Positions 3,298-54,530 of a stretch of 64,000 bases of DNA are shown here, piece by piece (position 1 is the stretch's first letter; every line of letters starts with the position of its first letter). The notes beneath the pieces are model-generated. The model saw only the letters and a program-made list of their open reading frames with translations. It was not told the origin of the DNA and ran no database searches. The stretch spans positions 202,740,001 to 202,804,000 of the forward strand of contig NC_042998.1 in NCBI RefSeq assembly GCF_006345805.1, written 5' to 3'. The stretch comes from Octopus sinensis (Eukaryota). Position numbers and translations under genes: made by a program.

Positions 3298-3941
3298 GCC
3301 TGCGTGCAACTGTCATTTAACGAATATTACTTCGAAATCCCACATCACGATACGCAAACCCGTGTCCGCAACAAACATAAAAGAGAGTGAAATTGATATT
3401 GTCAATGCCTGGTTGGGCTCGTCTCCAGCCGGAACACACACACACACCTATTATATTTAATATGCCAACACTTCCCCCCCACTCTTCACTAAACTATCAG
3501 CAAGACAATTTGAAAACAACTAAAGCAAATTTCGAAGGCCTTTCATCTCCTTAAAATATATGTGAAACAATTCCATTTAATATTCTCTTGATACAGTTCA
3601 GCTGCAGCTATCACAAAAACAATCATCTCTGTTTAGCACTGACCTTAATGACCTCGTTACTGTCCATCCTTTTACTAATGGTACAGCTTCTCACCTTTCC
3701 TCGATAACCATATCTACCATTATGGCAACATTATCCTCATTATCATCATCATTCTCCCTCTCTTCCTAGTCATCATCATCGTCTTCTACTTTTGCTATAA
3801 TTCCTACTGCTGCTACTTCTACTAACTCTATCAACAAGAGGAAACCATTTCCCATCATTTTCACCATCTGAAATCAACATGAAAGTCTTATTAAACTCAT
3901 CTAGCGTGGAAAGCATGACGTCATCCCCTAATGTACCTATT

Positions 3942-4354
3942 TCTTTACTACCCACAAGGGGCCAAACACAGAGAGGACAAACAAGGACAGACAAACGGAT
4001 TAAGTCGATTATATCGACCCCAGTGCGTAACTGGTACTTAATTTATCGACTCCGAAAGGATGAAAGGCAATGTCGACCTCGGCGGAATTTGAACTCAGAA
4101 CGTAACGGCAGACGAAATACCTATTTCTTTATTACCCATAAGTGGCTAAACATAGAAGGGACAAACAAGGACAGACAAACGGATTAAGTCGATTACATCG
4201 ACTCCAGTGCGTAACTGGTACTTAATTTATCAACCCCGAAAGGATGAAAGGCAAAGTTGACCTTGGCGGAATTTGAACTCAGAACGTAGCGGCAGACGAA
4301 ATACCGGAAAGCATTTCGCCTGGCGTGCTAACGTTTCTGCCAGCTCGCTGCCCT
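3942..4354 (-). mobile_element. SINE-A head-to-tail dimer (tRNA-derived SINE)
   Basis: On the minus strand: head GGCAGCGAGCTGGCAGAAACG (A-box-like), GAGTTCAAATTCC (B-box-like), body GCCTTTCATCCTTTCGGGG..AAGTACCAG, tail TGTGGGTAGTAAAGAAAT. 18-bp TSD tcccctaatgtacctatt at 3924-3941 and 4355-4372. Confidence 0.92.
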
Positions 4355-8759: not shown

Positions 8760-9300
8760 AGGCGACGAGCTGGCAGAAACTTTAGCACGCTGGACGAAAT
8801 GCCGAGCGGTATTTCGTCTTTCATCTGCCGTTACGTTCTGAGTTCAAATTCCGCCTAGGTCGACTTTGCCTTTCATCCCTTCGGGGTCGATTAAATAAGT
8901 ACCAATTACGCACTGGGGTCGATGTAATCGACTTAATCCCTTTGTCTGTCATTGTTTGTGCCCTCTAGGTTTAGCCCCTTGTGGGCAATAATGAAATGTA
9001 TAATTGTTTATTTTAGAGAAAAAAAAGCTGAGGTCGACTTTGCCTTTCATCCTTTCGGGGTCGATTAAATAAGTACCAGTTACGCACTGAGGTCGATATA
9101 ATCGACTTAATCCGTTTGTCTGTCCTTATTTGTCCTCCCTGTGTTTAGCTCCTTGTGGGTAGTATAGAAATAGGTATTTCGCCTATCTTTACGTTTTGAA
9201 TTCAAATTCCGCCGTCGCCGACTTTGCCTTTCATCATTTCGGTTGACTTACCCCCACTCCGAAAATTTCGGGCCTTGTGCCTATAGTTGAAAGGATTATT
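8760..9300 (+). mobile_element. SINE-A cluster (full copy, truncated copy, tail-2 unit)
   Basis: Family match; junction gaaata|ggtatttcg at about 9172. Confidence 0.9.
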
Positions 9301-9774
9301 ATAAATTCATTAAGCAAGTACTAAAGCATTTCTACTGATCACTCTCTATCCTAGTACACTAACTGCCAGGAGAAAATGCTAAAAGAGGTTAAATTCCTGT
9401 GCTCTTCACGAACAAGAAATTAAATATGTGTGCGCACGTCTATTTGGGTGTGTATATGCATGCATACATATGTTTGTATTTAAAAATCTATTTATATATT
9501 AGTATCCACTGTCATCTAAATGACACGAGCGGAATTTCACGGGAAGAATAATATTATTGAATGTTACATAAATGATTTTGCCCGTCATTTTGTCTGCTAG
9601 CTAAGGTGAAATGGTTGTATGGTGTACGAGTCAGAAATGACTAACGACAAACACTTTCTTCAAGTCTACATCGGATTTCTCAAATTCCACTTGCGAAAGA
9701 TACTCTTCTCTTGTGAATTCGTAGTGAAACTAACTTCAGCGGATTAATCTACTCTAAGCATGTAGATCGTAGAT

Positions 9775-10253
9775 TGTGGGATGACGTCAGCAGCTGGGGA
9801 GCTGACCGGAACTTGGGGCTGGCCGGAAGAGGAGGGGCAGGAGTGACGCGCGCGCAGGCAGCACAGCATTGGGCCTTTTCGATCGAGGTAACCGAGGGAG
9901 TTGGACGTGTGAGCGCTTTGTTAAGGTAGGGGAATAGCAGTTGCTATTTCTAGTGTCCGAGTCGGGCTGCGTGGAAGGGTGCATTACCACTGGAGACGTC
10001 TCCATCGAAGAAGAGATGGTAGGTGTCGTTATTTCAAATCTCCCGCATACACCACATAACAGATGCAAAAGATTATATATTTTTAGTCATCAGGGTGAGC
10101 TTCGATCTTTAGGTTTCCTTCGTTTGGTTGCAGCCCTCTTGTATCTGGAGTTCTGTATAGTTCATATATTTATATATTTGTATAATATGTTTATTTGTTA
10201 GTTTATATCACGTTTTTATCCTTTTTACAAATACACCCGGGTGTATGTTAACA
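9775..10253. promoter_or_regulatory. GC-rich segment with CRE and ETS-like motifs (possible solo LTR or TE promoter)
   Basis: TGACGTCA at 9782-9789, two CCGGAA motifs and a CGCGCG run in an AT-rich background. TGT..ACA bounds are possible, but no TSD was found. Confidence 0.3.
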
Positions 10254-10656
10254 CCTGCACAAAATTGTCCTTTTCCTCTGATGTGATACCTCTGTGGCAA
10301 GTAAAGGAAATCATTATTATTTTATTCTTACTATTTTGCAGATCAATACAGTGTCGGGCACAATGCTTTGTGTTATTTGATCTGGAACTTTAAGCTCCGA
10401 GTTCAAATCCTGACGCAATCAGCATTACTTTCCATCCTTTCAGCGTCAATGAAATAAAATACCAGTCAAGTACTTGGGTCAGTTGTATTTGCAAACGCTC
10501 TTCACAAAATTTCAGGCCTTGGACTTATGCTAGAAATATTATTATAGACATTAGCACATCACCTATCTACTCAGGTTCCAGTTTACTCCTTTTTGTTGGT
10601 CTTCGTTATTATTTTTCATAGTTATTAAGTTCCAGTGCATGAGGCAATATTAAGTA

Positions 10657-10973
10657 GTGGAGGCACATGGCCTAGTGGTTAGAGAAGCGGACTTGCGGTC
10701 GAGGGAACGCGGGTTCGAATCTCAGACCGGGCGATGTGTGTGTTTATGAGCGAAACACCTATGCTCCACGCAGCTCCGACAGAAGGTAATGGCGAACCTC
10801 TGCTGACTCTTTCGCCACGACTTTCTCTCACTCTTTCCTTCTGCATCTTTCAGCTCACCTGCGACGGACCGGCGTCCCATCCAGGTGGGGAACCTATACG
10901 CTAAGGAAACCGGGAAACCGGCCCTTATGAGCCAGGCATGGCTCGAGAAGGAACAAGCAGACAAACAAACAAC
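10657..10973 (+). mobile_element. SINE-C, tRNA-derived SINE
   Basis: Canonical A box TGGCCTAGTGG and B box GGTTCGAATC, (CAAA)-type tail, 15-bp TSD aggcaatattaagta at 10642-10656 and 10974-10988. Confidence 0.9.
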
Positions 10974-11363
10974 AGGCAATATTAAGTAATTTAACTGGCA
11001 TGGGATTGGAAATTATCACACGTAAAAGATAGTTTCAACTGGAAAATAAACTTACATTGCAGTGTCGAATCGTCGAACATCATGTTGCTCGATTTAGCAT
11101 CACAGATACGAGCCAATGAGGTGGCCTCTACACGAACGCCTAACTGGCTAGAACTAACAGCCAAGTCTTCCTAAACTCACAACCTACCATATTAGAAAAT
11201 GAGGATATATTGGATGTGTAAATAACATAGTTATAGGTACACTGCTTCTAAAGGTAGAGGAGATGGTTACGGATAGAAGACATTTCATCATAAGTTTGCT
11301 CTCATCTGGGGTTAAATCGTAAGTGTCGCCATAAAATTTGTTTTCTTCTGACATAGTGCAATG

Positions 11364-11813
11364 GGTACTACTAGCGAACAGTGGTCCCGGTGCGCACTCG
11401 AGCATCCACGCAAGCTAGTCGTAAGTCGTCGATCCTACAACGACTTGCGCGTATGTTTGTATTTCAAGGCTGAATACATATCAAAGAAAATTAAATATTT
11501 TTCGAACAAAGTAAATAAAACGCAAAGTAAATATTTTTTTAATTAAGTAAATGAATTATTTTTTAAAACAATGTATATAATTTTTTTACACAAATTAAAT
11601 ATTTTTCGAACAAAGTAAATAGAACGAAAAGTAAATAATTTTTTAAAGTAAGTAAATAAATCATTTTTATAAACAAAGATTAGGGATAAAAAATTAGGTT
11701 GTAGGTTAGGGTTAGGTTTAGGGTTAAAAAGTCGTTGTAGGATCAACTACTTACGACTAGCTAGCGCAGATGCGCGAGAGGGCGCACCGGGACCACTGTT
11801 CGCTAGTAGTACC
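11364..11813. mobile_element. MITE with about 84-bp TIRs and 8-bp TSD
   Basis: TIRs begin GGTACTACTAGCGAACAGTGGTCCCGGTGCGC. TSD gtgcaatg at 11356-11363 and 11814-11821. Confidence 0.9.
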
Positions 11814-13459
11814 GTGCAATGTCCTAGTTTCGAACATTCATGCTTCTCCGATAAGAATTAATCGACTAATAAGAATTATATTGCGTTAATGATGAGAGCG
11901 AAACTGTGTTCGGCTCACGGTTTGTCAAGAAAATTTTGTTCTAGGTTGCTATGAAAGATATTGATTTATGATTAATATTGATTTATGCAACTGGTATAGA
12001 TTTCTAACATTAGTATCAATATTGTATCTAGTATCACTAACTTTCAATAAGATCACGACGCAATTTCGATTCCTGTTTGGAGCCGTTTTCCATTCACTTC
12101 TCTATTGACTCCTGTACAACATTTCAATCACACATCCTCCTATGGCTAAGTGTCTCAATTTGCGGTACCTGTGTAAGAAACAAATTATTTTTATATCCAG
12201 ACTACATTATTCCAGCTGAATGTTAATTTTAATTATCACAAAATCAAAAAACAGCCGGAAGGATTAAGATATCAATTCTTACTTAATATTCATGGTTTTC
12301 TTTTTTAGAATGTTTTACTGTAGATTTTCTTCTTATTGTTGTTATCGTTTTAGATGTTCTTATATTTTTCCCTTGTTCTGGGTGATTTTTCAACACGTAA
12401 ATTATATCTTTAAGAATCTATGAAAAATTACTGTTTGTTTACAATATAATGCACAGCTAGCAAAATATATATAAATATAAAAGGAATAAATCTTTTTCTG
12501 ATTTGTTCTTGTTGAGAGATGTCTGCTAAAGTTACTGGTGAATGAAACATAGGTTTATAAAGGTATAAACGAAACATATTGAGCGACACCACCCTTAAGA
12601 CATACAAATGACTAAATAATATGTCTGCCTCTATATATTATCACATATCATCAATGTTTGTATCTGGCTATGAATCAAGTTATGCGTATATATGTATATA
12701 CGTGTGTTTTTATATTACTATAACATTTTGTACAAACACAGTGAAATAGAAATATATCCACAATACATGAAGATAAAGACGTAATTAGAAAAGAAGAAAA
12801 ATCAATAATAAATAAAGAAAATAGATATAAATATATGTCTATTTGATTGAAAACTGCTGTAAATTTACAAATCAAATTAATATTGAGATTTTCATGTTTA
12901 GCGGTGCGTCTCGTTAAAATACGACTTCAGTGAATTTCTTGTGTTAAAGCGTAGTGACAAAAACTTAATGAGTACTTGGTTACACACGTAGAGCCGTTTT
13001 CACGAAGAAAAAAAAAATGAAATACTCATGACTATCTTCAGAGATTCTAAGACAGGTGGCAAAAAATTATCCTCAGATCGAAAACCTATCTCGAATGCTT
13101 GCAACAGAATTTGTTCCGCTAGAAGCACTCCAGGAATATATGATGATGTTAAACCAAGTAAATATAATACCGAAGAATTACCTTCCACGAACTTTCTAAG
13201 AAATTTTAGGAATGAAGAACAGGAAAAAAATATCACAAGATATGTTATCTAACTCTCAGGCCAGAAAGTTAGAGAAAGTAGCACAGACGATTTTATTGAC
13301 TCCTGTACTTGACTAGCATTTATTTTATCGATACTGAAACGATGACAGGCATTGTTAGCCTCGGCGGGATTTGATATATAAATGTAATAATAAAATAAAA
13401 TTTATCATTGTATATTTCTCACGTAATTTGTAATTGTATGTATAGTATTACTAATCCTT

Positions 13460-14189
13460 TCTACTATAGGCACAAGGCCTGAAATTGTGAGGAGGGGGGA
13501 CTATTCGATTACATCAGCCACAGTGTTTCACTACTACTTAATTTATCGACCCCGAAAAGATGAAAGTTAAAGTTGACCTTGGAGGAATTTGAACTCAGAA
13601 CGTGGTGACGGCCGAAATACTGCTAAGCATTTCGTCCACCGTGCAAACGAGTCTTTTGTTTTCTTCTCTAGGCACAAGGCCCGAAATTTTAGGGGAGGGG
13701 GCCAGTTGATTAGATCGACCTCAGTAGGCAACTAATACTTTATTTATCGACCCCGAAAGAATGAAAGGCAAAGTCGACCTCGTCAGAATTTGAACCCAGA
13801 ACGTAATTACAGAAGAAATAGCTATTTTTTTTACTGCCCACAAGGGGCTAAACACACAGAGGACAAACAAAGACAGACAAACGGATTAAGTCGATTATAT
13901 CGACCCCGGTGCGTAACTAGTACATATTTAATCGACCCCAAAAATGAACGGCAAAGTCGACCTCGTCGGAATTTGAACCCAGAACGTAATTACAGAAGAA
14001 ATACCTATTTTGTTGCTGCCCACAAGGGGCTAAACATAGAGAGGACAAACAAGGACAGACATAGGTATTAAGTCGATTATATCGACCCCAGTGCGTAAAT
14101 AGTACATATTTAATCGACCCCGAAAGGATGAAAGGCAAAGTCGACCTCGGCGGCATTTGAACTCAGAACGTAGCGCGAGACGAAATACC
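13460..14189 (-). mobile_element. SINE-A tandem array (about 4 units, mixed tails)
   Basis: Repeated units of about 185 bp joined at GAAATA-G(G/C)TATTTC. Confidence 0.9.
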
Positions 14190-14472
14190 GATTTCTTTAT
14201 TACCCACCTAACATAGAAGGTACGTGCACAATATCGGGGAACTAAAATTATAAAAAGGAGGCATAAAGAAAGAAGCGAAATTAAAAGAAACGAATGAATC
14301 ATGAAAAAGATGATATAATGAGGTGGAATGCACACTCGATCCCCGAAGTCGAGTGGTTACATTGAAACCGTTTTACCGTTCAATCATACTTATCTAAAAT
14401 TCAGCAGTTCAATACCGTAGTCATTTTTTAGTTCGATATTACATGTCTGTTTTGGCGATTGCTCTCTTTCCC

Positions 14473-14703
14473 GGTGGCGAGCTGGCAGAAACGTTAGCAT
14501 GCCAGGCGAAATGCGTAGCCGTATTTCGTCTGCCGTTACGTTCTGAGTTCAAATCCCGCCGAGGTCGACTTTGCCTTTCATCCTTTCGGGGTCGATAAAT
14601 TAAGTACCAGTTACACACTGGGGTCGATGTAATCGACTCAATCCGTTAGTCTGTCCTTGTTCGTCCCCTCTATGTTGAGCCCCTTGTGGCTAATAAAGAA
14701 ACA
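14473..14703 (+). mobile_element. Full SINE-A inserted into gag-only element 1
   Basis: 16-bp TSD gattgctctc(t/c)ttccc at 14457-14472 and 14704-14719. Confidence 0.92.
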
Positions 14704-15054
14704 GATTGCTCTCCTTCCCGTATCACCTTCCACAACTCAATGCCGTTATCATACTTTTTTGCTATCTCCATTTGTGCCTTATTTAATAATTGACATATAA
14801 TAGGATCACCATCTACATCGAAGAATTCCACATCGACCACATCCTTCCACTCACTCATCAGGCTTACAACATCATCCTCCGCGTCCGCATACAAAACGCA
14901 AGCAAAACAAACAGGGGGAGAGGGAGCCATATCTACATCATGTGTGTTTGCATTTCTTCTCTGTTTTGTTGTTCGAGGGGAATGGGTAGATTTGGTGTTT
15001 GCATGGGGAGGGTGTGGTGAAAAGGGAGAGGGAGGGTACTGGGTGGGTTGGGGT

Positions 15055-15890
15055 TCAACAAGTTTCTTTTATTTCTTTTCTTTTCCCGGCTATTTCCCAT
15101 TCCCTATCTTCTAGTACTGGAGTTTCTCTTTCTCTTTCTACTTCTTGTATCCTCTCCTGTGGTGGTGGCTGTCGGTCTTCTACCATTTTGGGTGGTGGAG
15201 AGCAGTTCACTCTTATGTGGACGCCTTTCTGGCCACATTTAAAGCAGCGAGAAATCCTGCCCTCCACCCACACTTTCAGGATCAAATCCCCAATCCACAG
15301 ATTCTCGGGAAGCACTTCGAGGACCTCCACCTCAGCTTGGACGGTAATTTCGATGATTTGTCCCTTCCATGTTGCTCCTTCCATCACTTCCGCTTGAATT
15401 ACCTTCACCTCTTTTTCTCGTTCAATAATAAGAACCGCTACCAATCAAGCCGCATCGATTTCAGGGGAATCCCTTCCACTTTGATTTTGGCAATCCTCTT
15501 GCCCATGTAAGACGACAAGAGGACTACCTTTTCCGTTTTTAACACTTTGGCAGCGTGGGCTATCATTTTTTCCTCTGTTTTATAATGAACAATAATCGTC
15601 CCGAACTTGCTACCCCTGGCCAGGTAGGTAATTTCTGGACAGACTCTCATCAGCACCTTGTCTATCTCCTCCATGTGGTCGACTCTCTTTTTCTCAACTG
15701 AGTAAACTTTGTACGTTACCATCTTCTTTTGGATTTCATCCATCCTTGTCTGCCGTGGGGACAACCTCATGTCGTTCCCCACCTTTACAGCCATTCTACT
15801 GTCTCTTTCCATATTTGCCAGGCTTATTTTCTTCCTTCTCATCGCGGTTGCCTCTGCAAAACTTTTCTTTTCCAGACATGCGTCCAACAT
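15055..15890 (-). pseudogene. L1/Tx1-type ORF1 (gag-like; RRM-like region plus CCHC knuckle), frameshifted near 15440
   Basis: ORFs 15438-15890 and 15055-15444 join as ..KIKVEGIP(P)EIDAA*LVAVL..; motifs SFAEAT and VEGRISRCFKCGQKGVHIRVNC. Confidence 0.75.
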
Positions 15891-16024
15891 CTTTACTGCC
15901 TTAGGTTTCGCTTAGGTCCGAATATACACGACTTCCACCTGCCATCTCTCAGTACAACCGAGAGACAGCACAACAACTCAAAAACCGCTGCAAACGCAGC
16001 ACAAACTTCTCGTACAACTCACAA

Positions 16025-16958
16025 AGACGAAATACCTATTTCTTTACTATCCACAAGGGGCTAAACACAGAGAGAACAAACGAGGACAGACACATGTATT
16101 AAGTCGATTATATCGACCCCAGTGCGTAACTGGTACTTATTTAATCAACCCACAAAGGATGAAAGGCAAAGTCGACCTCGGCGGAATTTGAACTCAGAAC
16201 GTAGCACCAGACGAAATACCTATTTCTATTTCTTTACTACCCACAAGGGACTAAACACAGAGAGGACAAACAAGGGCAGATACACGGATTAAGTCGATTA
16301 TATCGACTCCAGTGTGTAACTGGTACTTATTTAATCGACCCCGAAAGGATGAAAGGCAAAGTTGACCTCGGCGGGATTTGAACTCAGAACGTAGCGCCAG
16401 ACGAAATGCCTATTTCTTTATTACCCACAAGGGGCTAAACACAGAGGGGACAAGCAAGGACAGACAAACGGATTAAGTCGATTATATCGAACCCAGTGCG
16501 TAACTGGTACTTAATTTATCGATCCCGAAAGGATGAAAGGCAAAGTCGACCTCGGATGAATTTGAACTCGGAACGTAGCGGCAGACGAATTACCCATTTC
16601 TTTATTACCCACAAGGGGCCGAACATAGAGGGGACAAACATGGACAGACATAGGTATTAAGTCGATTATATCGACCCCAGTGCTTAACTGGTACTTAATT
16701 TATCGACCCCGAAAGGATGAAAGGCAAAGTCGACCTCGGCGGAATTTGAACTCACAACGTAACGGCAGACGAAATACCGCTAAGCATTTCGCCCGACGTG
16801 CTAACGATTCTGCTAGCTCGCCGCCTTTTCTGCTAGCTCGCCGCAGACGAATTACCGCTAAGCATTTCGCCCGACGTGCTAACGATTCTGCTAGCTCGCC
16901 GCCTTTTCTGCTAGCTCGCCTCAGACGAATTACCGCTAAGCATTTCGCTCGGCGTGCT
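16025..16958 (-). mobile_element. SINE-A array (4 units plus repeated heads)
   Basis: Junctions near 16220, 16410 and 16595; 78-bp head duplications at about 16770-16940. Confidence 0.92.
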
Positions 16959-18886
16959 GATTTCTTTATTTGTTATTTGTTTATTGCCCACAAGGGGCTA
17001 AACATAGAGGCGACAGACAAAACAGCACAGTGGGGGTATAAAACATAGAACGAATAAATGATAAATGGATTATAATAATGAAAATGAAATGTCTAACCTG
17101 CTCCCCACTCGCAAGCAGTGTTATTTAAATGTTTTTGGTTAACGTTTGAAATTCAGTTCTTTTTTTCCCTCTTTCTTGCATCTTTTTTTGTGTTTTTTCT
17201 TTGAACGTCACTAACAATTTTTAAAATTTTACTTACATTGGTTCTTCCTTTTTATCATGCTAGGAACGTCATCAAATCTTGGAAGTCCACCACTAGTGGT
17301 AATACGACAAATTGAACTCATAATGCCGTTATCTATATCTTGTTCCCAAATTGTTCACTTAGTTTCTCACCTCTCGCTCTATCAAGTAAGATTGCTTTGG
17401 CGTTTACTGAGAATTCATTCGGTGCTAGTCTCACCCTAATTGCTGTTTTTATTTTTGTAATTTTCTCTTCTATTTCCACACTTTTAGTATATGTTATCAT
17501 GTTCCATATATGTTTTGGCTCTTTTTCTGTAGTCCTTCTTGCTTTCCCATGTTGGTTTCTTTATATGTTGTTGGTATTGGTACTTTTTTTATCTGTTGGT
17601 TTTTGCAATCCCACTTGCTTTTCCACTTCGACCTCTTTCGTTGCTGCTGGCATCTCCCGACGTGTTTCCCTCTCACTTGCTTGTTTGTGCAGTCCCACCT
17701 GCTCCTTCGTCCTAACCTCCCTCGACGCTGCTGGCATCTCCTGTCTTACTTCTTTCCTCTTCTGCAGTTTCACCTGCTCTTCCTCGCTGGTTCCCTCGAT
17801 GTCGCTGGACTTCCTTCTGTACTCTCTTTCCTTTTCTTTAGCGGACTCTTGGGAGGTGAGTCCACATTTCCTTCCCACTTCTTTCTCTTTACCACCATAA
17901 ATTGTTCCTCGACATTTTCTGAACTCTTTTCACCTTTTGGGTTTTGCACTTTGGCGATATGCACCTTCTCCTCGCCCTGCTTTTTCTGTTCCATTACATC
18001 CTCGTTGCCACCATGTATCCCCGTACTCCACATTAGTAGCAGGTTGTAAGTCTTCCTTCCACCACCACTCTCAAAATCACATCTTCCGGCAGTTTCACCT
18101 CCTCTATGTTTTGAAGGTCTGGCAAACTGACCTGGATCGAAACCTCAAGTTCGTATCTCCACCAGTCCGCCTATCACGTTTTCATCACTTTTAATACATT
18201 TACTTCCTCTTCCATGTTGAAAAGGATGGCTTCCACCAGCTACTCTTCTTCGATCTCAGGAGGCACTCTGCCGATACTTACTCTGACTACACGTTTGCCA
18301 CAGTAGGTCGGCAGAATTGGCCACTCTGTTGTTCTCAGCGCCACAGGGGAGTGGTTCATTGCTTCTTGATTATTGGCGAATCTCAACTCCACTGTGCCGC
18401 ATTTCTTCCCTCTTGTATAAAAAGTTGTGAACTCTTCACTTCTTTTAGGCATTCTTCTATCACCTACTCTGCGACTATTACAATTTTCTTTGTCTTCAGG
18501 AACAGGGTTCTGTATACCACTGTTCGTTCCATTATATTTGCTGTAAATATAATGGTGGTGTTAACTTCAGGCTGGTACAATCCTTTTTCCAAAAGTTTGT
18601 TGAATTCTTTCAACCTCTTCTGGTCGATTCTAATTTCTCACACTTGCAACACATCTACAGTTAAACTCCTACCAGTGGCTGGCGCATAGCTGCCGGCTGG
18701 AACTAGTTCACTCTCCATTCTTTCTCCTACATCACCCATAAATGGGGAGGAAAACAAATATAATATACTGACAAGAAAGCAGTAACAAATAATTCAAAAA
18801 TTCAACAATAGGTTCACTCTTACGGAAGACCTTCAACAATCAGACAAATCCAATTGAATATCTTGGTCACAAAAACAACATGACTC
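16959..18886 (-). mobile_element. gag/ORF1-only non-LTR-like element 2
   Basis: Exact 16-bp TSD tttcgctcggcgtgct at 16943-16958 and 18887-18902 splitting a SINE-A head; 3' end CCTCTATGTTTAGCCCCTTGTGGGCAATAAA matches the SINE-A tail; no pol seen. Confidence 0.87.
17260..18739 (-). pseudogene. Decayed ORF1 homologous to that of element 1
   Basis: MGDV..SYAPAT.., RGKKCGTVELRF..YCGKRVVRVSIGRVPPEIEEE*LVEAIL and VILRVVVEGRLTTCY*CGVRG align by eye with element 1; K/E-rich C-terminal region; several stops and frameshifts. Confidence 0.72.
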
Positions 18887-19313
18887 TTTCGCTCGGCGTG
18901 CTAATGATTCTGTTCGCTCGCCGCCTTATATATAGCAATAATAATTATTTTTACTCTAGGCACAAGGCCTTGAAAATTTTAGTGGGAAGAGTGTTAGTCG
19001 ATTATGTCACCCCCAGTGCGTAACTGGTACTTATTTCATCGACCTCGGTGGAATTTTAACTTAGAACGCAAATGAAATACCTATTTCTTTACTGCCCACA
19101 AGGGGCTACACATAGAGGAGACAAATAAGTACAGACAGACGGATTAAATCGATTATATCGACCCCAGTGCGTAACTGGTACATAATTTATCGACCCCGAA
19201 AGGATGAAAGAAAAGTCGACCTCGGCGGAATTTGAACTCAGAACCTAACGACAGACGAAATACCGCTAGTCATTTCGCCCGGCGTGCTAACGTTTCTGCC
19301 AGCTCGCCTGCCT
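18887..19313 (-). mobile_element. SINE-A head remnant plus SINE-A dimer
   Basis: Family match; junction at GGTATTTC near 19085. Confidence 0.85.
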
Positions 19314-19336
19314 TATATAAATAGTATTAATAATAA

Positions 19337-19648
19337 GGAGAACGGAGATTTTTCACATTCATAATTTCATTTAACAGTTATTTATAACATCTTTCCGGGA
19401 CCTACACGTGTTTCAACTGCAGCGACTACACACTGTTGGATATGGAACCTAGCAAAATACTTTATTCACTCAGTTTGTTGATTCGAAATGGCCGAGGGTG
19501 TGGGCCCTGATGAAACTGTACCGACCATGGTGCTAAGTTGCATATTCAACAGCGTGCAGTTGTTGAAGTTGAAACACGTGTAGGTTCCAAAAAGATGTTA
19601 TAAATAACTCTTAAATAAAATTATGTATGTTAAAATCTCCGTTTCCCG
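19337..19648. mobile_element. Fold-back element with about 120-bp inverted arms (Penelope pLTR-like)
   Basis: Arms at about 19337-19455 and 19530-19648 are roughly 80 percent identical by eye and contain hammerhead motif parts. Confidence 0.75.
19502..19588 (+). ncRNA. Type I hammerhead ribozyme motif
   Basis: GGGCC-CTGATGA-AACT..AGTT-GAAA-CACGTG-TA|GGTTC: intact core, palindromic stem III, GUA triplet. Confidence 0.65.
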
Positions 19649-19851
19649 AAACATTATTGATAGTGTTACAAAAGAACATACGCAGTCCCGAAAAGGTCAT
19701 TCGGTTTTACTCAGCGAGAAAAGTTACCAGAGGCTAACAACTTGGGTACCACATAAGAACCGTTGTGATTAGCCGGCATATGAAACCGACTTGAGAGGAA
19801 GCATGGCAATCGCCAGGATGATATATCCCTTTAAAATCATTTTGGTAATTA

Positions 19852-19893
<42 letters not shown>

Positions 19894-20004
19894 TAATTTT
19901 ATCTATCAAATTCACTTACAATGCATTAATCTACTTGAAGCTACAGCAGATGACATTTCTTAGGGTGCCGCACAATGAGACTGAAGCCGAAGTCATCATC
20001 AGTG

Positions 20005-20041
<37 letters not shown>

Positions 20042-20069
20042 TATTATCACTATTATTATTGTTATTACT

Positions 20070-21495
20070 ATGAAAGCGGTGAACTGGCAGAATCGTTAGC
20101 ACGCCTGGGAGTATGCTTAGCGACATTTCATCCATGAAACACAGCCGAGGTCGACTTTGCCTTTCGTCGTTTGGGAGTCAATAAAGTAAATAGCAGTGAA
20201 ACACTGGGATCGATGTAATCGACTTATCCCCTCACCCGAAACTGCTGGCTTTGTGCCAAAATTTGAAATTTTTATTATTGTGGGGGAGGCAGCAAGCTGG
20301 TTTAACTGTTAGCACGCCGGACAAAATGCTTGCGGTATTTCGTCTGTCTTTACGTTCTGAGTTCAAATTCCACCAAGGTCGACTTTGCCTTTCATCCTTT
20401 CGGGGTCGATAAATTAATTACCAGTTGCGTACTGCGGTCGATCCAATCGACTGGCCCTTCCCCCAAAATTTCGGGCCTTGTGCCTAGAGTGGAAAAGAAT
20501 CATTAGCACGCTGGCAGAAATGCTTAGCGGTATTTATATAAAGGCGGCGAGCTGGCAGAAACGTTAGTACGCCGGGCGAAATGCTTAGCGGCATTTCGTC
20601 TGCGTTACGTTGTGAGTTCAAATTCCGCCGAGGTCGACTTTGCCTTTCATCCTTTCGGGGTCGATAAATTAAGTACCAGTTACGCACTGGGGTCGATGTA
20701 ATCGACTTAATACCTATGTCTGTCCTTGTTTGTCCCCTCTGTGTTTAGCCCCTTGTGGGTAATAAAGAAATAGGTATTTCGTCTGCTGCCAAGGTCAACT
20801 TTGCCTTTCATCCTTTTGGGGTCAATTAAGTAAATACCAGTTACGCACTGGGGGTCGATGTAATCGACTTAATCCCTTCGTCTGTCCTTGTTTGTCCCCT
20901 CTGTGTGTAGCCCATTGCAGGCAGTAAAGAAATAGGTATTTCGTCTGTTGCTACGTTTTGAGTACAAATTTCGCCGCGGCCGGCTTTTCCTTTCATCCTT
21001 TTGGGGTCAATAAATTAAGTACCAGTTACGCACTGGGGTCGATGTAATCGACTTACCCGCTCCCCACAAATTTCAAGCGTTGTGCCTTTAGGATTCTATT
21101 TTTTATTTTACATGGCGTCGTACCGAGTAAAATGCTTAGCAACTGTTCGTCCGTCTGCATGTTCTGAGTTCAAATTTCGCCGAAGTCGACTTTGCCTTCC
21201 ATCCTTTCAGAGTCGGTAAGGTAAGTACCAGTTGGGGTCGATGTATTCGGCTATTCCCCTCTCCCTAAAAATTTCAGGCTTTGTGTCTATAGTAGAAAAG
21301 AGGGGACAAACAAGGACAGACATAGGTATTAAGTCGATTACATCGACCCAGTGCGTAACTGGTACTTAATTAATCGACCCCGAAAGGATGAAAGGAAAAG
21401 TCGACCTCGGCGGAATTTGAACTCAGAACGTAACGGCAGAGGAAATACGGCTACGCAATTCGTCCGACGTGCTAACGTTTCTGCCAGCTCGCCGC
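20070..21495. mobile_element. Nested SINE-A cluster (mostly + strand; last copy minus)
   Basis: At least 6 units; joins at TTAGCACG (about 20502) and GGTATTTC (about 20774 and 20934). Confidence 0.9.
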
Positions 21496-22034
21496 GATAA
21501 TATTAGTACCACTTGAACACTGGTGTCGATGTAGTCGACATACCCCTTCATCTCCCCTCTGAAGCCTTGTACCAAAATTTGAAACTATTATTATGATTAT
21601 TAATGTCATTAATTGGAAGAAGTTACAAAGTCACACAAGGGCCCATGAGTTTCATAAGCACATTTTCGCTCTTTGTGTCATTTGGTTACTTCTGAAGAAT
21701 AGAAACTATATATTTTATAACTTCGTGTTCTATATAACTTTGTTATATCAATGCAGTTCTCTCTCTCGTCTCTCTCTCTCTTTCTTTCTCTCTCTTCTCT
21801 CTTTCTTTCTTTCTCTCTCTCTCGTTCTCTCTCACTCCTTTTTTCGTTTTACTTTTGTTTCTCTATCTATCAATTTTTTAACCCTGTCTCTCTGTATGTG
21901 TGCGTGTGTCTGTAAAGGAACATATAGGGATATATAATATATATATATATATTTGCATAGGCACACATATACGCACTCACAGACACGTATAAGTATATAT
22001 GTTTGATGTGTGTGGGGTGTATATATGTATATAT

Positions 22035-52229: not shown

Positions 52230-54530
52230 TTCACACATTTGAAAGCATTTGCAATGCATAATCTTCCTTCGTAAATCTTTTATTAAGTAATTTCTAATCT
52301 GTCCTTCCAAACACATTTCTTCGATCCATTGACTAAGTCTTCATAATTTCTGTTTTATCGGTATTTATCTTCAAACAACACCCTTTACCACATTTATCAA
52401 GTATCGTATATCATTCTTTGTATATACAATGCTGAATTAGTAAGTAAATCTTCAGAATATTCCGCATACTTTCCATAAACCCATTCTGTTCTTTCCCTTC
52501 CATCTCAAGATCCTTTCTTCCTAATGTAATCTATCATAACTGCAAACAAGAGAGGTGACAGAATGATTCCCTGCTGTACTCTACTTCAAAATTTGTCTGA
52601 GTGTTCAACGTCTACGCTTACTCGGTATTTATTTTCACCGTATAGTACACGTGCTAGATTGATATAGTTTTCTGTCGAATAGTAGCATAGCTCCTTCTAA
52701 ATTATAGGCCCATGTGCACTACTAAAGGTCTTCCCAAAGTCTGCAAAAGCCATTAGAAACATGTCTAAAAATTAACGCATAGCTTTATGATGTACCTCTG
52801 CAAATATGTCTGATTCTTACAACCACAGGACCGTCAGAACTCCACATGCCCATCTCTTGGTAGTCTGTCCAATGCAATCCTTATCCAATACAGAATAAAC
52901 GAACGCAACATTTTCAATACTACGGTGAACGGTTATAATCCTCCGATCACCACGCTCTTTGAGATCAACTTATTTTGGTATGTTAGTTGCCGCGCAGATC
53001 TTCTTGTCTTCAGGTATTTGTTCAATCTTCTGTATATCACGAAACAGTTTCGATAATGTTTTTCCATTCCCTTGCTTATCTGGTTTTAGCATTTCTCCTG
53101 TAATTCCATCTAATTCAGGATTCTTTCCGTTTTGCAATTGCTCAGTGGCTCTTGCTATTTCTTCAATGGATATTTCAAGTACAGCTATTTGCTCCTCCTT
53201 TTTTGGATCAGAAATGATCAGATAACCTATCCTATAAAACGCCTTGTTCATGATTGTATTAAAATATTCGTTCGAACTTCCTTGGATGTTTATATTAAAT
53301 GTTATTAGTCGCCCATCAGTATAAAACCGAGGTAGTCTTTTTGATCTCTTTATTTCTAATCCCATTTATTATTTCATAAATTTTTCGAATTCCTCTACTG
53401 TTTCCTGCATTGAGTAATTTATCTGCTTCATCAACTTTCGCTTTCAAGAATCTTCTTTTATCTTTGGAACACCTATTGACTTCTCTGTTGAGACACCAAT
53501 ATTTAGTTATTTGCCTCAATAAATTTCCATTTATCATCCAAAATGCATTTCCTGCTTTTTATCTTTCTGCCTATAACACCTTTACCTACAAACTGGTATA
53601 TTTCTTTTAGCTCCTCCCATGCACTATTGATGTCCACATCTTCATCTATAGACTTCAAAACACTGCAAATCGATTTCGACATCCAATTGCATATTCATCT
53701 CTAATTACATCATCCTTCAACTTTCTGCATCAAACAAGATACTCCATCCTTTTCTGTAGCTTCCAGCTTTAAATTACTTATCCTTGAATTGGGGTCCATT
53801 TCCGATATCTGAACTTCGATGTGTTTGTTCTAAAATCTAGCACTGATATTTTTTACGTTGCCCATTTAGTATGCTGTTACCTAATTTGATTTGGAAACTT
53901 TTTATTACAATATTTTTATCTGTAGATTACCATGCATATTTATGTATAATCATTTTGTTTGAAGAAAATACCTCCTATGATGAGAGTGTTGTTTACACAA
54001 ACACTGACAATTTTATACCATTTTCAAGGGCATCGCTATGATATCGTATGTTCTTCATCCTCGTTGCTACTGCCAGCTTCTGCAGTTATATGACCAATCT
54101 TGATCTACATATCTACTTCTAGTATACTTTAAATTCCCTCTTGCTATAATTGGTAGAAAGAATCTTTTGATCTATCGGTTGCATTATTTATAACTCTGTA
54201 ACAAACAATAAAATCGATGTTGCATCGCTCCACTTTAAGCTTCACCAACGAAATTTCTTAACGTTTCCATTCAAGTAAGCTTCCATCACCCTCATTTTCA
54301 TATTTTACCCATTGTATTAATTTTCACCCAACCTCCGGATACAGTTTCATTTATGGTCGACTTATCAATTTTGTAGCATTCCATTGTCTTCTATGTCCTC
54401 TTCTAATACGCATTATTTTGTTTATAGTTTTCATTTCTGTGTTATAAATCAGTCGAAGATTCGTTGGTTAGACACTTCGTTGATTGGTTACGCAGTTTCC
54501 ATCTACCAGCAGTTAATTCCCATTCAAAGC
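52230..54530 (-). mobile_element. Decayed RTE-clade LINE (EN-RT)
   Basis: QLQNGKNPELDGITGEMLK, GIILSPLLFAVMIDY and EN-region NNTLIIGG..HKYAW motifs. Confidence 0.8.

What the first reader, a model, noticed from the sequence alone, without database searches (positions are those of the whole stretch)
14178..18902. Two diverged gag/ORF1-only retroelements that carry the SINE-A tail and sit in SINE-A heads with exact TSDs
Seen in sequence: element 1 (14190-16024, minus) is bounded by the 12-bp duplication GGTATTTCGTCT. Element 2 (16959-18886, minus) is bounded by the 16-bp duplication AGCACGCCGAGCGAAA, which includes a copy-specific variant base. Both duplicated sites lie in the tRNA-derived head of SINE-A. 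Both elements run from a T-rich leader through homologous but highly diverged ORF1 proteins (SFAEAT/SYAPAT, GIPPEI/RVPPEI, VEGR..CxxCG knuckle) to a 3' end resembling the SINE-A tail (CTATGTT..GTGGG(T/C)AATAAA..GAAATC), with no room for EN-RT. Established: ORF1-only elements exist (HAL1, HeT-A), Tx1-clade LINEs are often target-specific (Keno/U2, Mutsu/5S), and SINEs borrow the 3' tail of their partner LINE. Inference: a three-part system in which an unseen autonomous L1/Tx1-like LINE mobilises both SINE-A and long-lived gag-only families and directs them into SINE-A heads.
Basis: partly seen in the sequence, partly recalled or inferred. Interest (0 to 1): 0.92.

Follow-up and report, generated by a model that had tools for sequence, protein, structure and literature searches.

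The report
Gag-only Tx1-like retroelements in SINE heads
Two decayed octopus retroelements keep only the first (gag-like) gene of a Tx1-type LINE, share their 3' end with that LINE and with an abundant SINE, and sit inside the heads of that SINE, so they are real ORF2-less hitch-hikers of a LINE/SINE partnership rather than chance look-alikes.

Summary
E1 (14190-16024, minus) and E2 (16959-18886, minus) are bounded by exact 12-bp and 16-bp target-site duplications. Removing each restores an uninterrupted SINE-A sequence. Both encode decayed, homologous ORF1 proteins, have no ORF2, and end in the SINE-A tail.

The "unseen" autonomous partner exists. Full-length about 5.3-kb LINEs in Octopus vulgaris, O. 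sinensis and Argonauta hians carry the same ORF1 family. Their ORF2 has an APE endonuclease, a reverse transcriptase and zf-RVT, and is closer to Xenopus Tx1 than to human L1. They carry the same 3' motif (CCCTTGTGG..AATAAAGAAA).

Further ORF2-less copies with the same architecture occur at other loci in O. sinensis and O. bimaculoides. One of them again lies in a SINE-A head, with an 18-bp duplication. ORF1 comparisons between gag-only copies give dN/dS of about 0.2-0.3 with saturated dS.

Insertion into SINE-A heads is a preference, not a rule. It holds for 4 of 8 tail-bearing non-SINE insertions, against about 1-2% expected. None of the three full-length LINE loci shows insertion into a SINE head.

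Verdict: a HAL1-like ORF1-only lineage of a Tx1-clade LINE with a Tx1-style preference for a repeat target. It is a new variant of known kinds. Trans-mobilisation and the targeting mechanism are inferred, not shown.

The parts
14178..14189 (.). Target-site duplication of E1, downstream copy in element orientation (AGACGAAATACC). It is also the start of the next SINE-A array unit.
14190..16024 (-). E1: ORF2-less (gag-only) derivative of a Tx1-like LINE. 1835 bp, or 1588 bp without the nested SINE.
14190..14219 (-). E1 3' tail, CTTCTATGTTAGGTGGGTAATAAAGAAATC. Same motif as the SINE-A and full-length LINE tails.
14335..14353 (-). E1 3'UTR hairpin CTCGA-CTTCGGGGA-TCGAG. It corresponds in position to hairpins with a G-rich loop in E2, L007, L009 and the full-length LINE of L005.
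14393..14930 (-). E1 ORF1 C-terminal acidic region, homologous to the same region of L007. It is interrupted by the nested SINE.
14457..14720 (+). Later full-length SINE-A insertion (14474-14703) inside E1, with a 17-bp duplication GATTGCTCTC[T/C]TTCCCG (14457-14473 and 14704-14720).
15058..15890 (-). E1 ORF1 N-terminal part, RRM-like region and CCHC-like knuckle. One frameshift near 15465 and a TGA at a Trp codon (15445-15447).
15891..16024 (-). E1 5'UTR, homologous to the 5'UTRs of the L001 and L007 copies.
16025..16036 (.). Target-site duplication of E1, upstream copy. It lies between the tail of the preceding SINE-A unit and the E1 5' end.
13704..14188 (-). SINE-A array units downstream of E1, each starting at the head site GGTATTTCGTCT.
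16037..16825 (-). SINE-A array between E2 and E1: one nearly full-length unit followed by three units that start at the head site.
16765..16958 (-). 78-bp tandem repeats of SINE-A head sequence (2.5 copies, 96% alike). The last one is the head that E2 interrupts.
16943..16958 (.). Target-site duplication of E2, downstream copy in element orientation (TTTCGCTCGGCGTGCT).
16959..18886 (-). E2: second, highly diverged gag-only element, 1928 bp.
16959..17021 (-). E2 3' tail module. It matches the SINE-A tail module at 83-90% identity.
17098..17118 (-). E2 3'UTR hairpin CTGCT-TGCGAGTGGGG-AGCAG.
17258..17512 (-). E2 ORF1 C-terminal domain. It matches the C-terminus of P0001 (32.6% identity, E 6e-11) and of P0120 (46%).
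17997..18718 (-). E2 ORF1 N-terminal part, RRM-like region and decayed knuckle. Several stops and frameshifts, including a TAG at the Trp codon (18240-18242).
18887..18902 (.). Target-site duplication of E2, upstream copy.
18903..18925 (-). 5' remainder of the SINE-A head interrupted by E2 (GGCGGCGAGCGAACAGAATCATT).

Best explanation
E1 and E2 are old, now-dead copies of two deeply diverged subfamilies of non-autonomous retroelements. They derive from a Tx1-clade (L1-group) LINE of octopods.

Each element keeps four parts of the LINE: the 5'UTR, the complete ORF1, about 200-330 bp of 3'UTR, and the terminal motif ..CCCTTGTGG(G/C)NAATAAAGAAAT. The ORF1 comprises an N-terminal region, an RRM-like ferredoxin fold, a CCHC knuckle, a low-complexity linker and a C-terminal domain. 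The 3'UTR includes a stem-loop with a G-rich loop. The whole of ORF2 (APE endonuclease, reverse transcriptase, zf-RVT) is missing.

Inferred mechanism: the elements are transcribed from their own 5'UTR. Their RNA is recognised through the shared 3' end by ORF2 protein supplied in trans by full-length relatives. It is then copied into the genome by target-primed reverse transcription, which leaves the 12-18-bp duplications seen here. The abundant SINE-A carries the same 3' module and is taken to use the same enzyme.

Integration shows a marked but not exclusive preference for the head of SINE-A, always in the SINE's orientation. The sites fall between what look like the A and B boxes. One site (GGTATTTCGTCT) is also where SINE-A copies join head-to-tail into arrays.

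Shown: anatomy, homologies, duplications, empty sites, the existence of full-length partners, purifying selection on ORF1 in the history of the lineages, and enrichment in SINE heads.
Inferred: trans-mobilisation, present or past activity of gag-only master copies, and what causes the target preference.
For: TSDs and empty sites.

ORF1 homology and spread:
- E1 and E2 are homologous at protein level.
- The ORF1 family is large and octopod-wide: 630 cluster representatives at E<=1e-3, with named members from O. bimaculoides, O. sinensis, O. vulgaris and Argonauta hians.

Full-length LINEs with ORF1 plus ORF2:
- L005 in O. vulgaris, L003 in O. sinensis, L004 in A. hians.
- L002 shows the start of ORF2.
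- ORF2 domains are Exo_endo_phos, RVT_1 and zf-RVT.
- The best named ORF2 homologues are 'transposon TX1 149 kDa protein', including Xenopus YTX2. Scores are 307 bits against Tx1 and 211 bits against human L1 ORF2p.

Same tail on full-length LINEs, gag-only copies and SINE-A.

Absence of ORF2 and shared architecture:
- No ORF2 homology in the window, L006, L007 or L008. In L009 the only ORF2 hit is a weak RT match about 7 kb upstream, on the opposite strand.
- Independent gag-only copies with the same layout: L007, L006, L009.
- The spacer after the ORF1 stop is shared by E2, L006, L008 and L009, and the 3'UTRs are homologous.

Selection: dN/dS is 0.19-0.31 with saturated dS between gag-only copies. 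The same nucleotides read out of frame give about 1.

Targeting:
- E1, E2, the L007 copy (18-bp TSD, 17/18) and a 5'-truncated 80-bp copy in L001 (TSD GGTATTTAACC at the same head site as E1) all lie in SINE-A-type heads, in the same orientation.
- SINE-A head sequence makes up 0.9% of the 215 kb sampled and 1.6% of the window.
- 11 of 16 SINE-A tails in the window abut the same head site.
- Array neighbours are no more alike (89.3%) than unrelated copies (89.4%), which argues for independent insertions rather than local duplication.
Against:
- Two of the four head insertions are the ones that prompted the finding.
- None of the three full-length LINE loci shows insertion into a SINE head. L003 sits in (ATT)n. 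L004 sits in sequence that is not SINE-A. In L005 the first copy follows unique DNA.
- Two gag-only or truncated copies in L001 are outside SINEs. The L006 copy's downstream flank is not SINE-A.
- No SINE-A tail abuts a head in the loci outside the window (0 of 4).
- The three head sites differ, and no endonuclease motif is evident.
- Every gag-only copy examined has at least one frameshift or stop, so no intact master copy was seen.
- The ORF1 tree has weak deep support. Part of the dN/dS signal could therefore have accrued in full-length ancestors.
- The L001 copy carries a different internal deletion, so sporadic deletions also occur.
- Clade assignment rests on score comparison, not on an RT phylogeny.
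- The SINE head is not recognised as tRNA by ARAGORN or Rfam.
Confidence: 0.72

Rival explanations
1. E1 and E2 are sporadic, dead-on-arrival, internally deleted copies of ordinary full-length Tx1-like LINEs. On this view each arose independently and there is no self-propagating ORF1-only family.
For: The L001 copy has a different internal deletion, running from mid-ORF1 to the last ~100 bp. All gag-only copies seen carry disabling mutations. Deep nodes of the ORF1 tree are unresolved.
Against: Copies that differ by 50-60% at the amino-acid level, sit at unrelated loci, and come from at least two species have the same organisation. In each, the ORF1 stop is followed by a conserved spacer with GTAAGT, a homologous 3'UTR and the tail. 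None of the E1-like or E2-like copies sampled has ORF2. dS is saturated while dN/dS is 0.2-0.3 between ORF2-less copies.
Confidence: 0.15
2. The position inside SINE-A heads is not a property of the integration machinery. It reflects chance, or better survival of insertions, in a region that is almost wall-to-wall SINE-A.
For: E1 and E2 lie 1 kb apart in one SINE cluster at 13.2-21.5 kb. SINE-to-SINE junctions are confined to this window. Full-length copies and several other copies are not in SINEs. The three head positions differ.
Against: The L007 copy was picked only by protein similarity, from another species and chromosome. It is again in a SINE-A head with an 18-bp TSD. A truncated copy in L001 uses exactly the E1 site in a solitary related SINE. 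All four are in the SINE's orientation and in the head, not the larger body. Head sequence is only about 1-2% of the DNA sampled, so 2 of 6 independent cases has a binomial probability of about 6e-3 (own arithmetic).
Confidence: 0.2
3. Gag-only copies are retrotransposed spliced RNAs of full-length LINEs (like spliced integrated L1 copies). On this view they are made again and again by removal of ORF2 as an intron.
For: All four full-length elements have GTAAGT at or just after the ORF1 stop, followed by a pyrimidine-rich spacer.
Against: Gag-only copies retain the GTAAGT-like motif and 20-150 nt beyond it, so that donor was not used. No acceptor-like junction is shared with the ORF2 end.
Confidence: 0.07
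4. The structures are template-switch chimeras made during one reverse transcription (SINE RNA, then LINE-derived RNA, then SINE RNA), not insertions into pre-existing SINEs.
For: Non-LTR reverse transcriptases can jump between templates (own knowledge). Head-to-tail arrays of SINE-A, of gag-only elements (L009) and of full-length LINEs (L005) exist.
Against: Exact 12-, 16- and 18-bp duplications flank each element. The SINE continues without gap or overlap across the empty site. A chimera would not duplicate 12-18 nt of the head on both sides.
Confidence: 0.03

Closest known systems
HAL1 (half-L1) elements of mammals; HeT-A of Drosophila telomeres (own knowledge)
   Same: These are non-autonomous LINE derivatives that keep a gag-like ORF1, lack ORF2/pol, and depend on a related autonomous element. 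They persist as families in their own right.
   Different: The parent here is a Tx1-clade LINE with an RRM-like plus CCHC ORF1, not an L1 with a coiled-coil/Transposase_22 ORF1 and not a Jockey-clade element. The 3' end is a specific shared motif rather than poly(A). Copies show a preference for a SINE head. No telomere role is implied.
Tx1-Mar LINEs and SINEU of crocodilians (Kojima 2015, PMC4494074); Tx1L in Tx1D of Xenopus; Keno in U2 genes
   Same: These are Tx1-clade LINEs whose insertions, and those of the SINEs they mobilise, concentrate in one other repeat family. They do so at more than one position and with fixed orientation at each position. Target sharing is used there as evidence of the partnership.
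   Different: The preferred target here is the head of the LINE's own tail-sharing, tRNA-type SINE, which produces self-nested SINE arrays. The preference was seen for ORF2-less derivatives and truncated copies, but not at the three full-length loci sampled. The partnership is also marked by a shared 3' tail, whereas all SINEU groups end in poly(A).
Stringent-type LINE/SINE pairs with a common 3' tail (e.g. UnaL2/UnaSINE1; Ohshima and Okada; cited in PMC4824008)
   Same: The SINE's 3' module (about 60 nt) matches the 3' end of a LINE, and the LINE 3'UTR has a conserved stem-loop upstream of the end.
   Different: Tail sharing is best known for L2, CR1 and RTE partners. Here the partner is in the L1/Tx1 group. 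Recognition of the tail by the reverse transcriptase was not tested.
TRE5/TRE3 non-LTR elements of Dictyostelium and Ty3 of yeast (own knowledge)
   Same: Integration is position- and orientation-biased next to or at Pol III promoter elements.
   Different: Those elements insert outside tRNA genes through contacts with TFIIIB/TFIIIC. Here the insertions are inside a SINE head, and no protein contact is known. This is a resemblance only.

Membership tests
Tx1 clade (L1 group) non-LTR retrotransposons: applies to the full-length partners | ORF2 with an N-terminal APE-type endonuclease | tested here: met
   Pfam Exo_endo_phos in L004 ORF2 (E 1.1e-8) and L005 (E 6.9e-6). An endonuclease-like N-terminus begins the ORF that follows ORF1 in L002.
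Tx1 clade (L1 group) non-LTR retrotransposons: applies to the full-length partners | Reverse transcriptase followed by a C-terminal Cys/His motif | tested here: met
   RVT_1 (E 6.5e-31) and zf-RVT (E 1.7e-8).
Tx1 clade (L1 group) non-LTR retrotransposons: applies to the full-length partners | RT groups with Tx1 rather than L1 in a phylogeny (e.g. RTclass1) | tested here: inconclusive
   Score comparison only. 307-314 bits and 31% identity over 777 aa against Xenopus Tx1 ORF2, versus 211 bits against human L1 ORF2p. No tree with reference clades was built.
Tx1 clade (L1 group) non-LTR retrotransposons: applies to the full-length partners | Target preference: one sequence type in more than 20% of flanks (criterion of Kojima 2015, PMC4494074) | tested here: inconclusive
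   4 of 8 tail-bearing non-SINE insertions with readable flanks are in SINE-A-type heads. None of the three full-length loci is. The sample is too small.
Autonomous LINE: applies to E1 and E2 themselves | Presence of ORF2 (EN and RT) | tested here: not met
   tblastn with ORF2 of L003, L004 and L005 finds nothing in the window. The element lengths leave no room.
ORF1-only non-autonomous LINE derivative (HAL1-like) | ORF1 homologous to the ORF1 of an autonomous LINE | tested here: met
   E1 against the L005 ORF1 (P0005): 38.5% identity, E 7e-46. E2 against P0005: 31%, E 3e-27. Profile search.
ORF1-only non-autonomous LINE derivative (HAL1-like) | The same 3' end as the autonomous element, and target-site duplications around the whole unit | tested here: met
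   Tail and 3'UTR alignments. TSDs of 12, 16 and 18 bp.
ORF1-only non-autonomous LINE derivative (HAL1-like) | Several independent copies that share the ORF2-less architecture, i.e. a family and not a one-off deletion | tested here: met
   E1 with L007. E2 with L006 and L009, and with L008 up to an assembly gap. Only a handful of copies could be fetched.
ORF1-only non-autonomous LINE derivative (HAL1-like) | ORF1 kept under purifying selection while ORF2-less | tested here: inconclusive
   dN/dS is 0.19-0.31 between gag-only copies against about 1 out of frame. The tree does not show that the divergence happened after the loss of ORF2.
ORF1-only non-autonomous LINE derivative (HAL1-like) | Mobilised in trans by the partner's ORF2 protein | not testable with these tools
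   Needs a retrotransposition assay.
ORF1 protein of the RRM plus CCHC type | CCHC zinc knuckle | tested here: met
   Pfam zf-CCHC in relatives P0001 (E 4.7e-5) and P0010 (E 1.6e-4). In E1 the motif is CX2CX5HX4C and scores only E 0.64. In E2 it is broken.
ORF1 protein of the RRM plus CCHC type | RRM fold | tested here: inconclusive
   The AlphaFold2 model of P0001 has a confident (pLDDT 90-96) beta-alpha-beta-beta-alpha-beta domain at residues 41-140. Foldseek finds only generic ferredoxin-like folds, none at E<=0.001. There is no Pfam RRM hit.
tRNA-derived SINE with a LINE-derived tail (SINE-A) | 3' module shared with a LINE | tested here: met
tRNA-derived SINE with a LINE-derived tail (SINE-A) | Head recognisable as tRNA | tested here: not met
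   ARAGORN finds no tRNA in the window and Rfam finds no tRNA match in 13000-21600. Only box-B-like GAGTTCAAATCCC and a box-A-like stretch are visible by eye.

The most novel reading that the evidence does not exclude
The ORF1-only lineages are not passive deletion products. They would be long-lived 'parasites of a parasite pair', whose own ORF1 protein steers the borrowed reverse-transcription machinery to Pol III-type SINE heads. One route would be contact with TFIIIC/TFIIIB or with SINE transcripts, as Dictyostelium TRE5-A ORF1p does with TFIIIB. This would explain three things: why ORF1 stays under selection without ORF2, why gag-only and truncated copies but not full-length LINEs are found in SINE heads, and why insertions are orientation-fixed but position-variable between the A- and B-box-like motifs. 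It would also explain how SINE-A arrays grow by repeated self-nesting.
Probability: 0.15. Interest if true: 0.8.

Novelty: new variant of a known kind. Interest (0 to 1): 0.55.

Why it matters
SINEs make up about 12% of octopus genomes, and their LINE partners have not been named in the papers I could read. Here one abundant SINE is tied, through a shared 3' module, to a specific Tx1-like LINE family that is still young in O. vulgaris.

ORF1-only LINE derivatives are rare and best known from mammals and fly telomeres. An old, diversified example in a mollusc would show that selection can maintain a gag-like gene in an element that has no polymerase of its own.

The preference for SINE heads offers a testable case of a LINE system that inserts into its own dependants. 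That behaviour limits harm to the host and builds SINE arrays.

For genome annotation, these elements explain a set of 'uncharacterized CCHC-type' gene models in octopus proteomes.

Tried and rejected
- Pfam on the raw E1 and E2 translations gave nothing significant.
- The word-indexed homologue search found only 2-3 octopus proteins, even with a profile. The exhaustive profile search was needed.
- Exact look-ups of P0001, P0003 and the E1 ORF found no contig.
- No second copy of E1 or E2 is in the window.
- Two other LINE remnants in the window were checked: about 51.3-54.3 kb on the minus strand, and the ORF at 31110-31538. They do not end in the tail motif and are unrelated.
- The ten longest family proteins were scanned for RT. 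They are chimeric gene models with WD40, LDLa or C2H2 domains and have no RT.
- The shared in-frame stop of E1 and E2 was considered as a shared ancestral lesion or a read-through signal. It was rejected because the codons differ (TGA and TAG) at a Trp codon.
- Local tandem duplication as the origin of the SINE arrays was rejected: identity within arrays equals identity between arrays.
- Splicing at the GTAAGT after ORF1 as the origin of the ORF2 loss was rejected, because gag-only copies keep that motif.
- Microhomology between the gag-only tail (..GAAATC) and the starts of the three TSDs: none is consistent. SINE-A itself ends ..AAATAGGTA and could pair with the nick at GGTA.
- The NJ tree of ORF1 was too weakly supported to decide between one or several origins. 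The first attempt timed out.
- Foldseek on the ORF1 model was uninformative.
- A full-text search for SINE-A and tail sequence strings found no paper. A search for ORF1-only LINE literature returned only noise.

Full report
**What is in the window.** A full-length copy is about 230 bp, for example 14474-14703. Two longer elements interrupt the cluster. The sequence is octopod: the encoded proteins find their only named relatives in Octopus bimaculoides, O. sinensis, O. vulgaris and Argonauta hians.

E1 (14190-16024, minus strand) is flanked by AGACGAAATACC at 14178-14189 and 16025-16036. E2 (16959-18886, minus strand) is flanked by TTTCGCTCGGCGTGCT at 16943-16958 and 18887-18902.
- Joining the flanks with a single copy of each duplication restores SINE-A without a gap. 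E1 then occupies SINE positions 46-57 and E2 positions 21-36 of the 230-bp unit.
- Both copies of the E2 duplication carry a base that the neighbouring heads lack.
- The E1 12-mer is also the first 12 nt of every array unit. The proof of duplication is therefore the extra copy between the preceding SINE tail and the E1 5' end.
- E1 later received a full-length SINE-A with a 17-bp duplication.

**The coding part.** Both elements have one broken reading frame. The two are homologous over about 140 residues (27-35% identity, E 1e-21).
- An exhaustive profile search found 630 cluster representatives at E<=1e-3.
- The family protein has an N-terminal region and a confidently modelled beta-alpha-beta-beta-alpha-beta domain (pLDDT 90-96). 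Foldseek places that domain only among generic ferredoxin/RRM-like folds.
- It also has a CCHC knuckle (Pfam zf-CCHC in P0001 and P0010), a lysine/glutamate-rich linker and a conserved C-terminal domain.
- E2 retains the C-terminal domain at 17258-17512. E1 and its relative in L007 share a different, acidic C-terminal region.
- The stop that both elements show at the same position is a parallel hit on a Trp codon: TGA in E1 and TAG in E2.

**The autonomous partner exists.** In four fetched loci the same ORF1 family is followed by a second ORF.
- L005 (O. vulgaris): ORF1 at 10001-11331 and ORF2 at 11337-14734. There are three head-to-tail copies 99-100% alike, with a period of 5.28 kb.
- L003 (O. 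sinensis): ORF2 decayed.
- L004 (A. hians): flanked by a 16-bp duplication.
- L002: a 2.2-kb contig that ends in the first 35 codons of the ORF that follows ORF1, which read like an endonuclease N-terminus.

ORF2 has Exo_endo_phos, RVT_1 and zf-RVT. Its best named relatives are 'transposon TX1 149 kDa protein', including the Xenopus protein itself. It scores 307 bits and 31% identity over 777 residues against Xenopus Tx1, and 211 bits against human L1 ORF2p. This places the LINE in the L1 group and nearer to Tx1, but I built no RT phylogeny. L1-Tx1 families are already listed as recently active in O. vulgaris (PMC13282606). An RT fragment 70-76% identical to L005 lies in the O. bimaculoides locus L001.

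**The shared 3' end.** All three full-length LINEs end in a version of ..GTCCCCTCT.TGTT..GCCC(C)TTGTGG(G/C)NAATAA(A)AGAA... SINE-A ends in the same motif, and so do E1, E2 and the other gag-only copies. The last 63 nt of E2 match the SINE-A tail module at 83-90%. The tail is therefore native to the LINE family and is not a SINE fragment that landed separately. The duplications enclose tail and ORF1 together. By the usual tail-sharing argument (PMC4824008 and references there), SINE-A is a dependant of this LINE family. That step is inference.

**ORF2 is truly absent, and not just in these two copies.** tblastn with three ORF2s finds nothing in the 64-kb window, nor in L006, L007 or L008. In L009 the only hit is a weak RT match about 7 kb upstream, on the opposite strand. 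Other copies, chosen only by ORF1 similarity, have the same layout.
- L007 (O. sinensis, E1-like, 9458-11056): 5'UTR, a nearly intact ORF1, a 3'UTR of about 200 bp, and the tail ..AATAAAGAAATC.
- L006 (O. sinensis, E2-like, 5'-truncated): also carries two later SINE insertions.
- L009 (O. bimaculoides, E2-like): ORF1 stop, a 3'UTR of about 330 bp and the tail, followed directly by the 5'UTR of a second copy.
- L008: the same up to an assembly gap.

E2, L006, L008 and L009 share the spacer after the stop (..GTAAGTAAAAT-like). The 3'UTRs align with the 3'UTR of the full-length LINE. They include a stem-loop with a G-rich loop whose stem sequences differ between copies. One copy in L001 carries a different, larger internal deletion, so sporadic deletions happen too.

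**Selection.** On codon pairs taken from collinear tblastx matches, gag-only copies give dN/dS of 0.28 (E1 vs L007), 0.19 (L007 vs L001) and 0.31 (E2 vs L006). dS is above 1.7, or too saturated to compute. The same nucleotides read one or two bases out of frame give 0.7-1.9. ORF1 was thus under purifying selection along the lines that lead to these copies. A neighbour-joining tree supports an E2-like clade (76%). It does not resolve whether all ORF2-less elements form one clade or when ORF2 was lost. Selection during the ORF2-less phase is therefore likely but not proven.

**Target sites.** Four insertions of tail-bearing, non-SINE elements lie in SINE-A-type heads, all in the orientation of the SINE.
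- E1.
- E2.
- The L007 copy, with duplication AGAAA[C/T]GTTAGCACGCCG at SINE positions 14-31.
- An 80-bp 5'-truncated copy in L001, with duplication GGTATTTAACC at the position equivalent to the E1 site in a solitary related SINE.

Four others are elsewhere: two copies in L001, the full-length L003 in (ATT)n, and the full-length L004 in sequence that is not SINE-A. SINE-A head sequence covers 0.9% of the 215 kb sampled and 1.6% of the window. At 2%, four or more of eight has a probability of about 1e-5. Without E1 and E2, two of six has about 6e-3 (own arithmetic). The nick sites share no clear motif. The preference is real on this sample, is not absolute, and is not shown for full-length copies.

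**SINE arrays.** In the window, 11 of 16 SINE-A tails are followed directly by the head from GGTATTTCGTCT onward. That is the E1 site. Neighbouring units are no more alike (89.3%) than unrelated copies (89.4%); for example, unit 16597-16780 is 97% identical to the copy at 42 kb but 88-91% to its neighbours. The arrays therefore look like repeated independent insertions at one head site, with the 5' junction resolved through homology, and not like local duplication. Solitary copies end ..AAATAGGTA. The RNA end could thus pair with the nicked strand ..TACC-3' at this site. This is a plausible mechanism for SINE-A but is inferred. No such junction was seen in the four SINE-A tails of the other loci.

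**Comparison with what is known.** The ORF2-less elements work like HAL1 of mammals and, more loosely, HeT-A. The concentration of a Tx1-clade LINE system in another repeat family, at several positions with fixed orientation, has a close precedent in Tx1-Mar and SINEU of crocodilians, and in Tx1L/Tx1D of Xenopus (PMC4494074). Four things differ here. The parent clade of an ORF1-only family is Tx1-like. The partnership is marked by a shared specific tail. The preferred target is the head of the system's own SINE. The preference shows up in the ORF2-less and truncated copies. I found no description of this in the octopus repeat papers I could read (PMC9115989, PMC8967140, PMC13282606), and no paper holding the SINE-A strings. 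Repbase and Dfam could not be consulted.

**Verdict.** It is a new variant of known kinds, of moderate interest. The interest would be higher if a genome-wide census confirms targeting of SINE heads and selection on ORF1 within ORF2-less clades.

Noticed in passing
window 3937-4348, 9027-9242, 13704-14188, 16037-16825, 19081-19308, 20543-21053: SINE-A copies are joined head-to-tail at one fixed point: the tail ..AAAGAAATA is followed by GGTATTTCGTCT of the head. This holds for 11 of 16 tails in the window and 0 of 4 in other loci. Units within an array are no more similar to each other than to unrelated copies, which suggests repeated insertion at one head site rather than tandem duplication.
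   Followed up: partly
window 16765-16958: There are 2.5 tandem copies of a 78-bp unit made of SINE-A head sequence, 96% alike. Each unit carries an internal duplication of the first ~14 nt (GGCGAGCTAGCAG). Unlike the 184-bp arrays, this one does look like a local duplication.
   Followed up: no
L005 4441-19185 (O. vulgaris OX597840.1): Three full-length Tx1-like LINE copies lie head-to-tail (period 5.28 kb, 99-100% identical), tail abutting 5'UTR with no duplication between them. The array ends in an assembly gap. This may be true tandem integration or template jumping, or partly an assembly effect.
   Followed up: partly
L009 8447-10400 (O. bimaculoides CM046615.1): Two E2-like gag-only copies are head-to-tail: the tail ..CCTAATAAAGAAAAC is followed directly by the 5'UTR of the next copy. 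This is the same arrangement as for the full-length LINEs and the SINE arrays.
   Followed up: no
window 14335-14353 and 17098-17118; L007 ~10921-10942; L009 ~9578-9602; L005 ~14778-14812: The 3'UTRs carry a stem-loop with a G-rich loop (..GGGG..). The stem sequence differs from copy to copy (CTCGA/TCGAG, CTGCT/AGCAG, GTTATCC/GGGTAAC, CTGCATGG/CCATGCAG, GCTCG/CGAGC). It is a candidate recognition element for the reverse transcriptase. Single-sequence z-scores run from -1 to -3.4, and L006, L003 and L004 are unclear.
   Followed up: partly
L005 11325-11345, L003 11800-11870, L004 11575-11625, L002 2055-2105: In all four full-length LINEs the ORF1 stop overlaps or is followed by GTAAGT/GTAAAT. 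A pyrimidine-rich spacer then runs up to the ORF2 ATG. Gag-only copies keep a GTAAGT-like motif after their stop. This might be a splice donor or a signal for ORF2 translation.
   Followed up: partly
window 15445-15447 and 18240-18242: E1 and E2 have an in-frame stop at the same ORF1 position, a conserved Trp in relatives. The codons differ (TGA and TAG), so these are independent TGG-to-stop transitions.
   Followed up: yes
window 13285-13374, 13505-13634, 13704-13820, 18996-19047, 20144-20224, 20292-20452, 21130-21252; L001 15294-16018: Many SINE copies share the SINE-A head and body but stop matching at about position 165-177, before the Tx1-type tail module. They probably belong to sister SINE families with another 3' module and another LINE partner.
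   Followed up: no
window ~51300-54300 (-) and 31110-31538 (+): A decayed LINE of another family (endonuclease and RT remnants) lies at 51.3-54.3 kb, and a 142-aa ORF typical of a LINE region lies at 31.1 kb. Neither has the Tx1-type tail nor matches the Tx1-like ORF2.
   Followed up: partly
L006 11107-11526: A different SINE (GGCGCAGAAGTGGCTGTGTGGTAAGTAGCTTGC...) is inserted in the 3'UTR of the E2-like copy. A full-length SINE-A is inserted in that copy's ORF1 linker (10447-10672).
   Followed up: no
octopus protein sets (P0104, P0043, P0012, P0002): Several annotated octopus 'genes' are chimeric models that fuse gag-only ORF1 fragments to WD40, LDL-receptor or C2H2 exons, or splice across the element. 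One O. vulgaris ORF1 is named 'EPM2A-interacting 1-like'. These are annotation artefacts of this repeat family.
   Followed up: partly
window 19755-19901 (+): A weak Rfam match to SCARNA7 (24 bits against a gathering score of 65, E 0.011) lies in a TG/TCA-repeat region. It is most likely chance.
   Followed up: no
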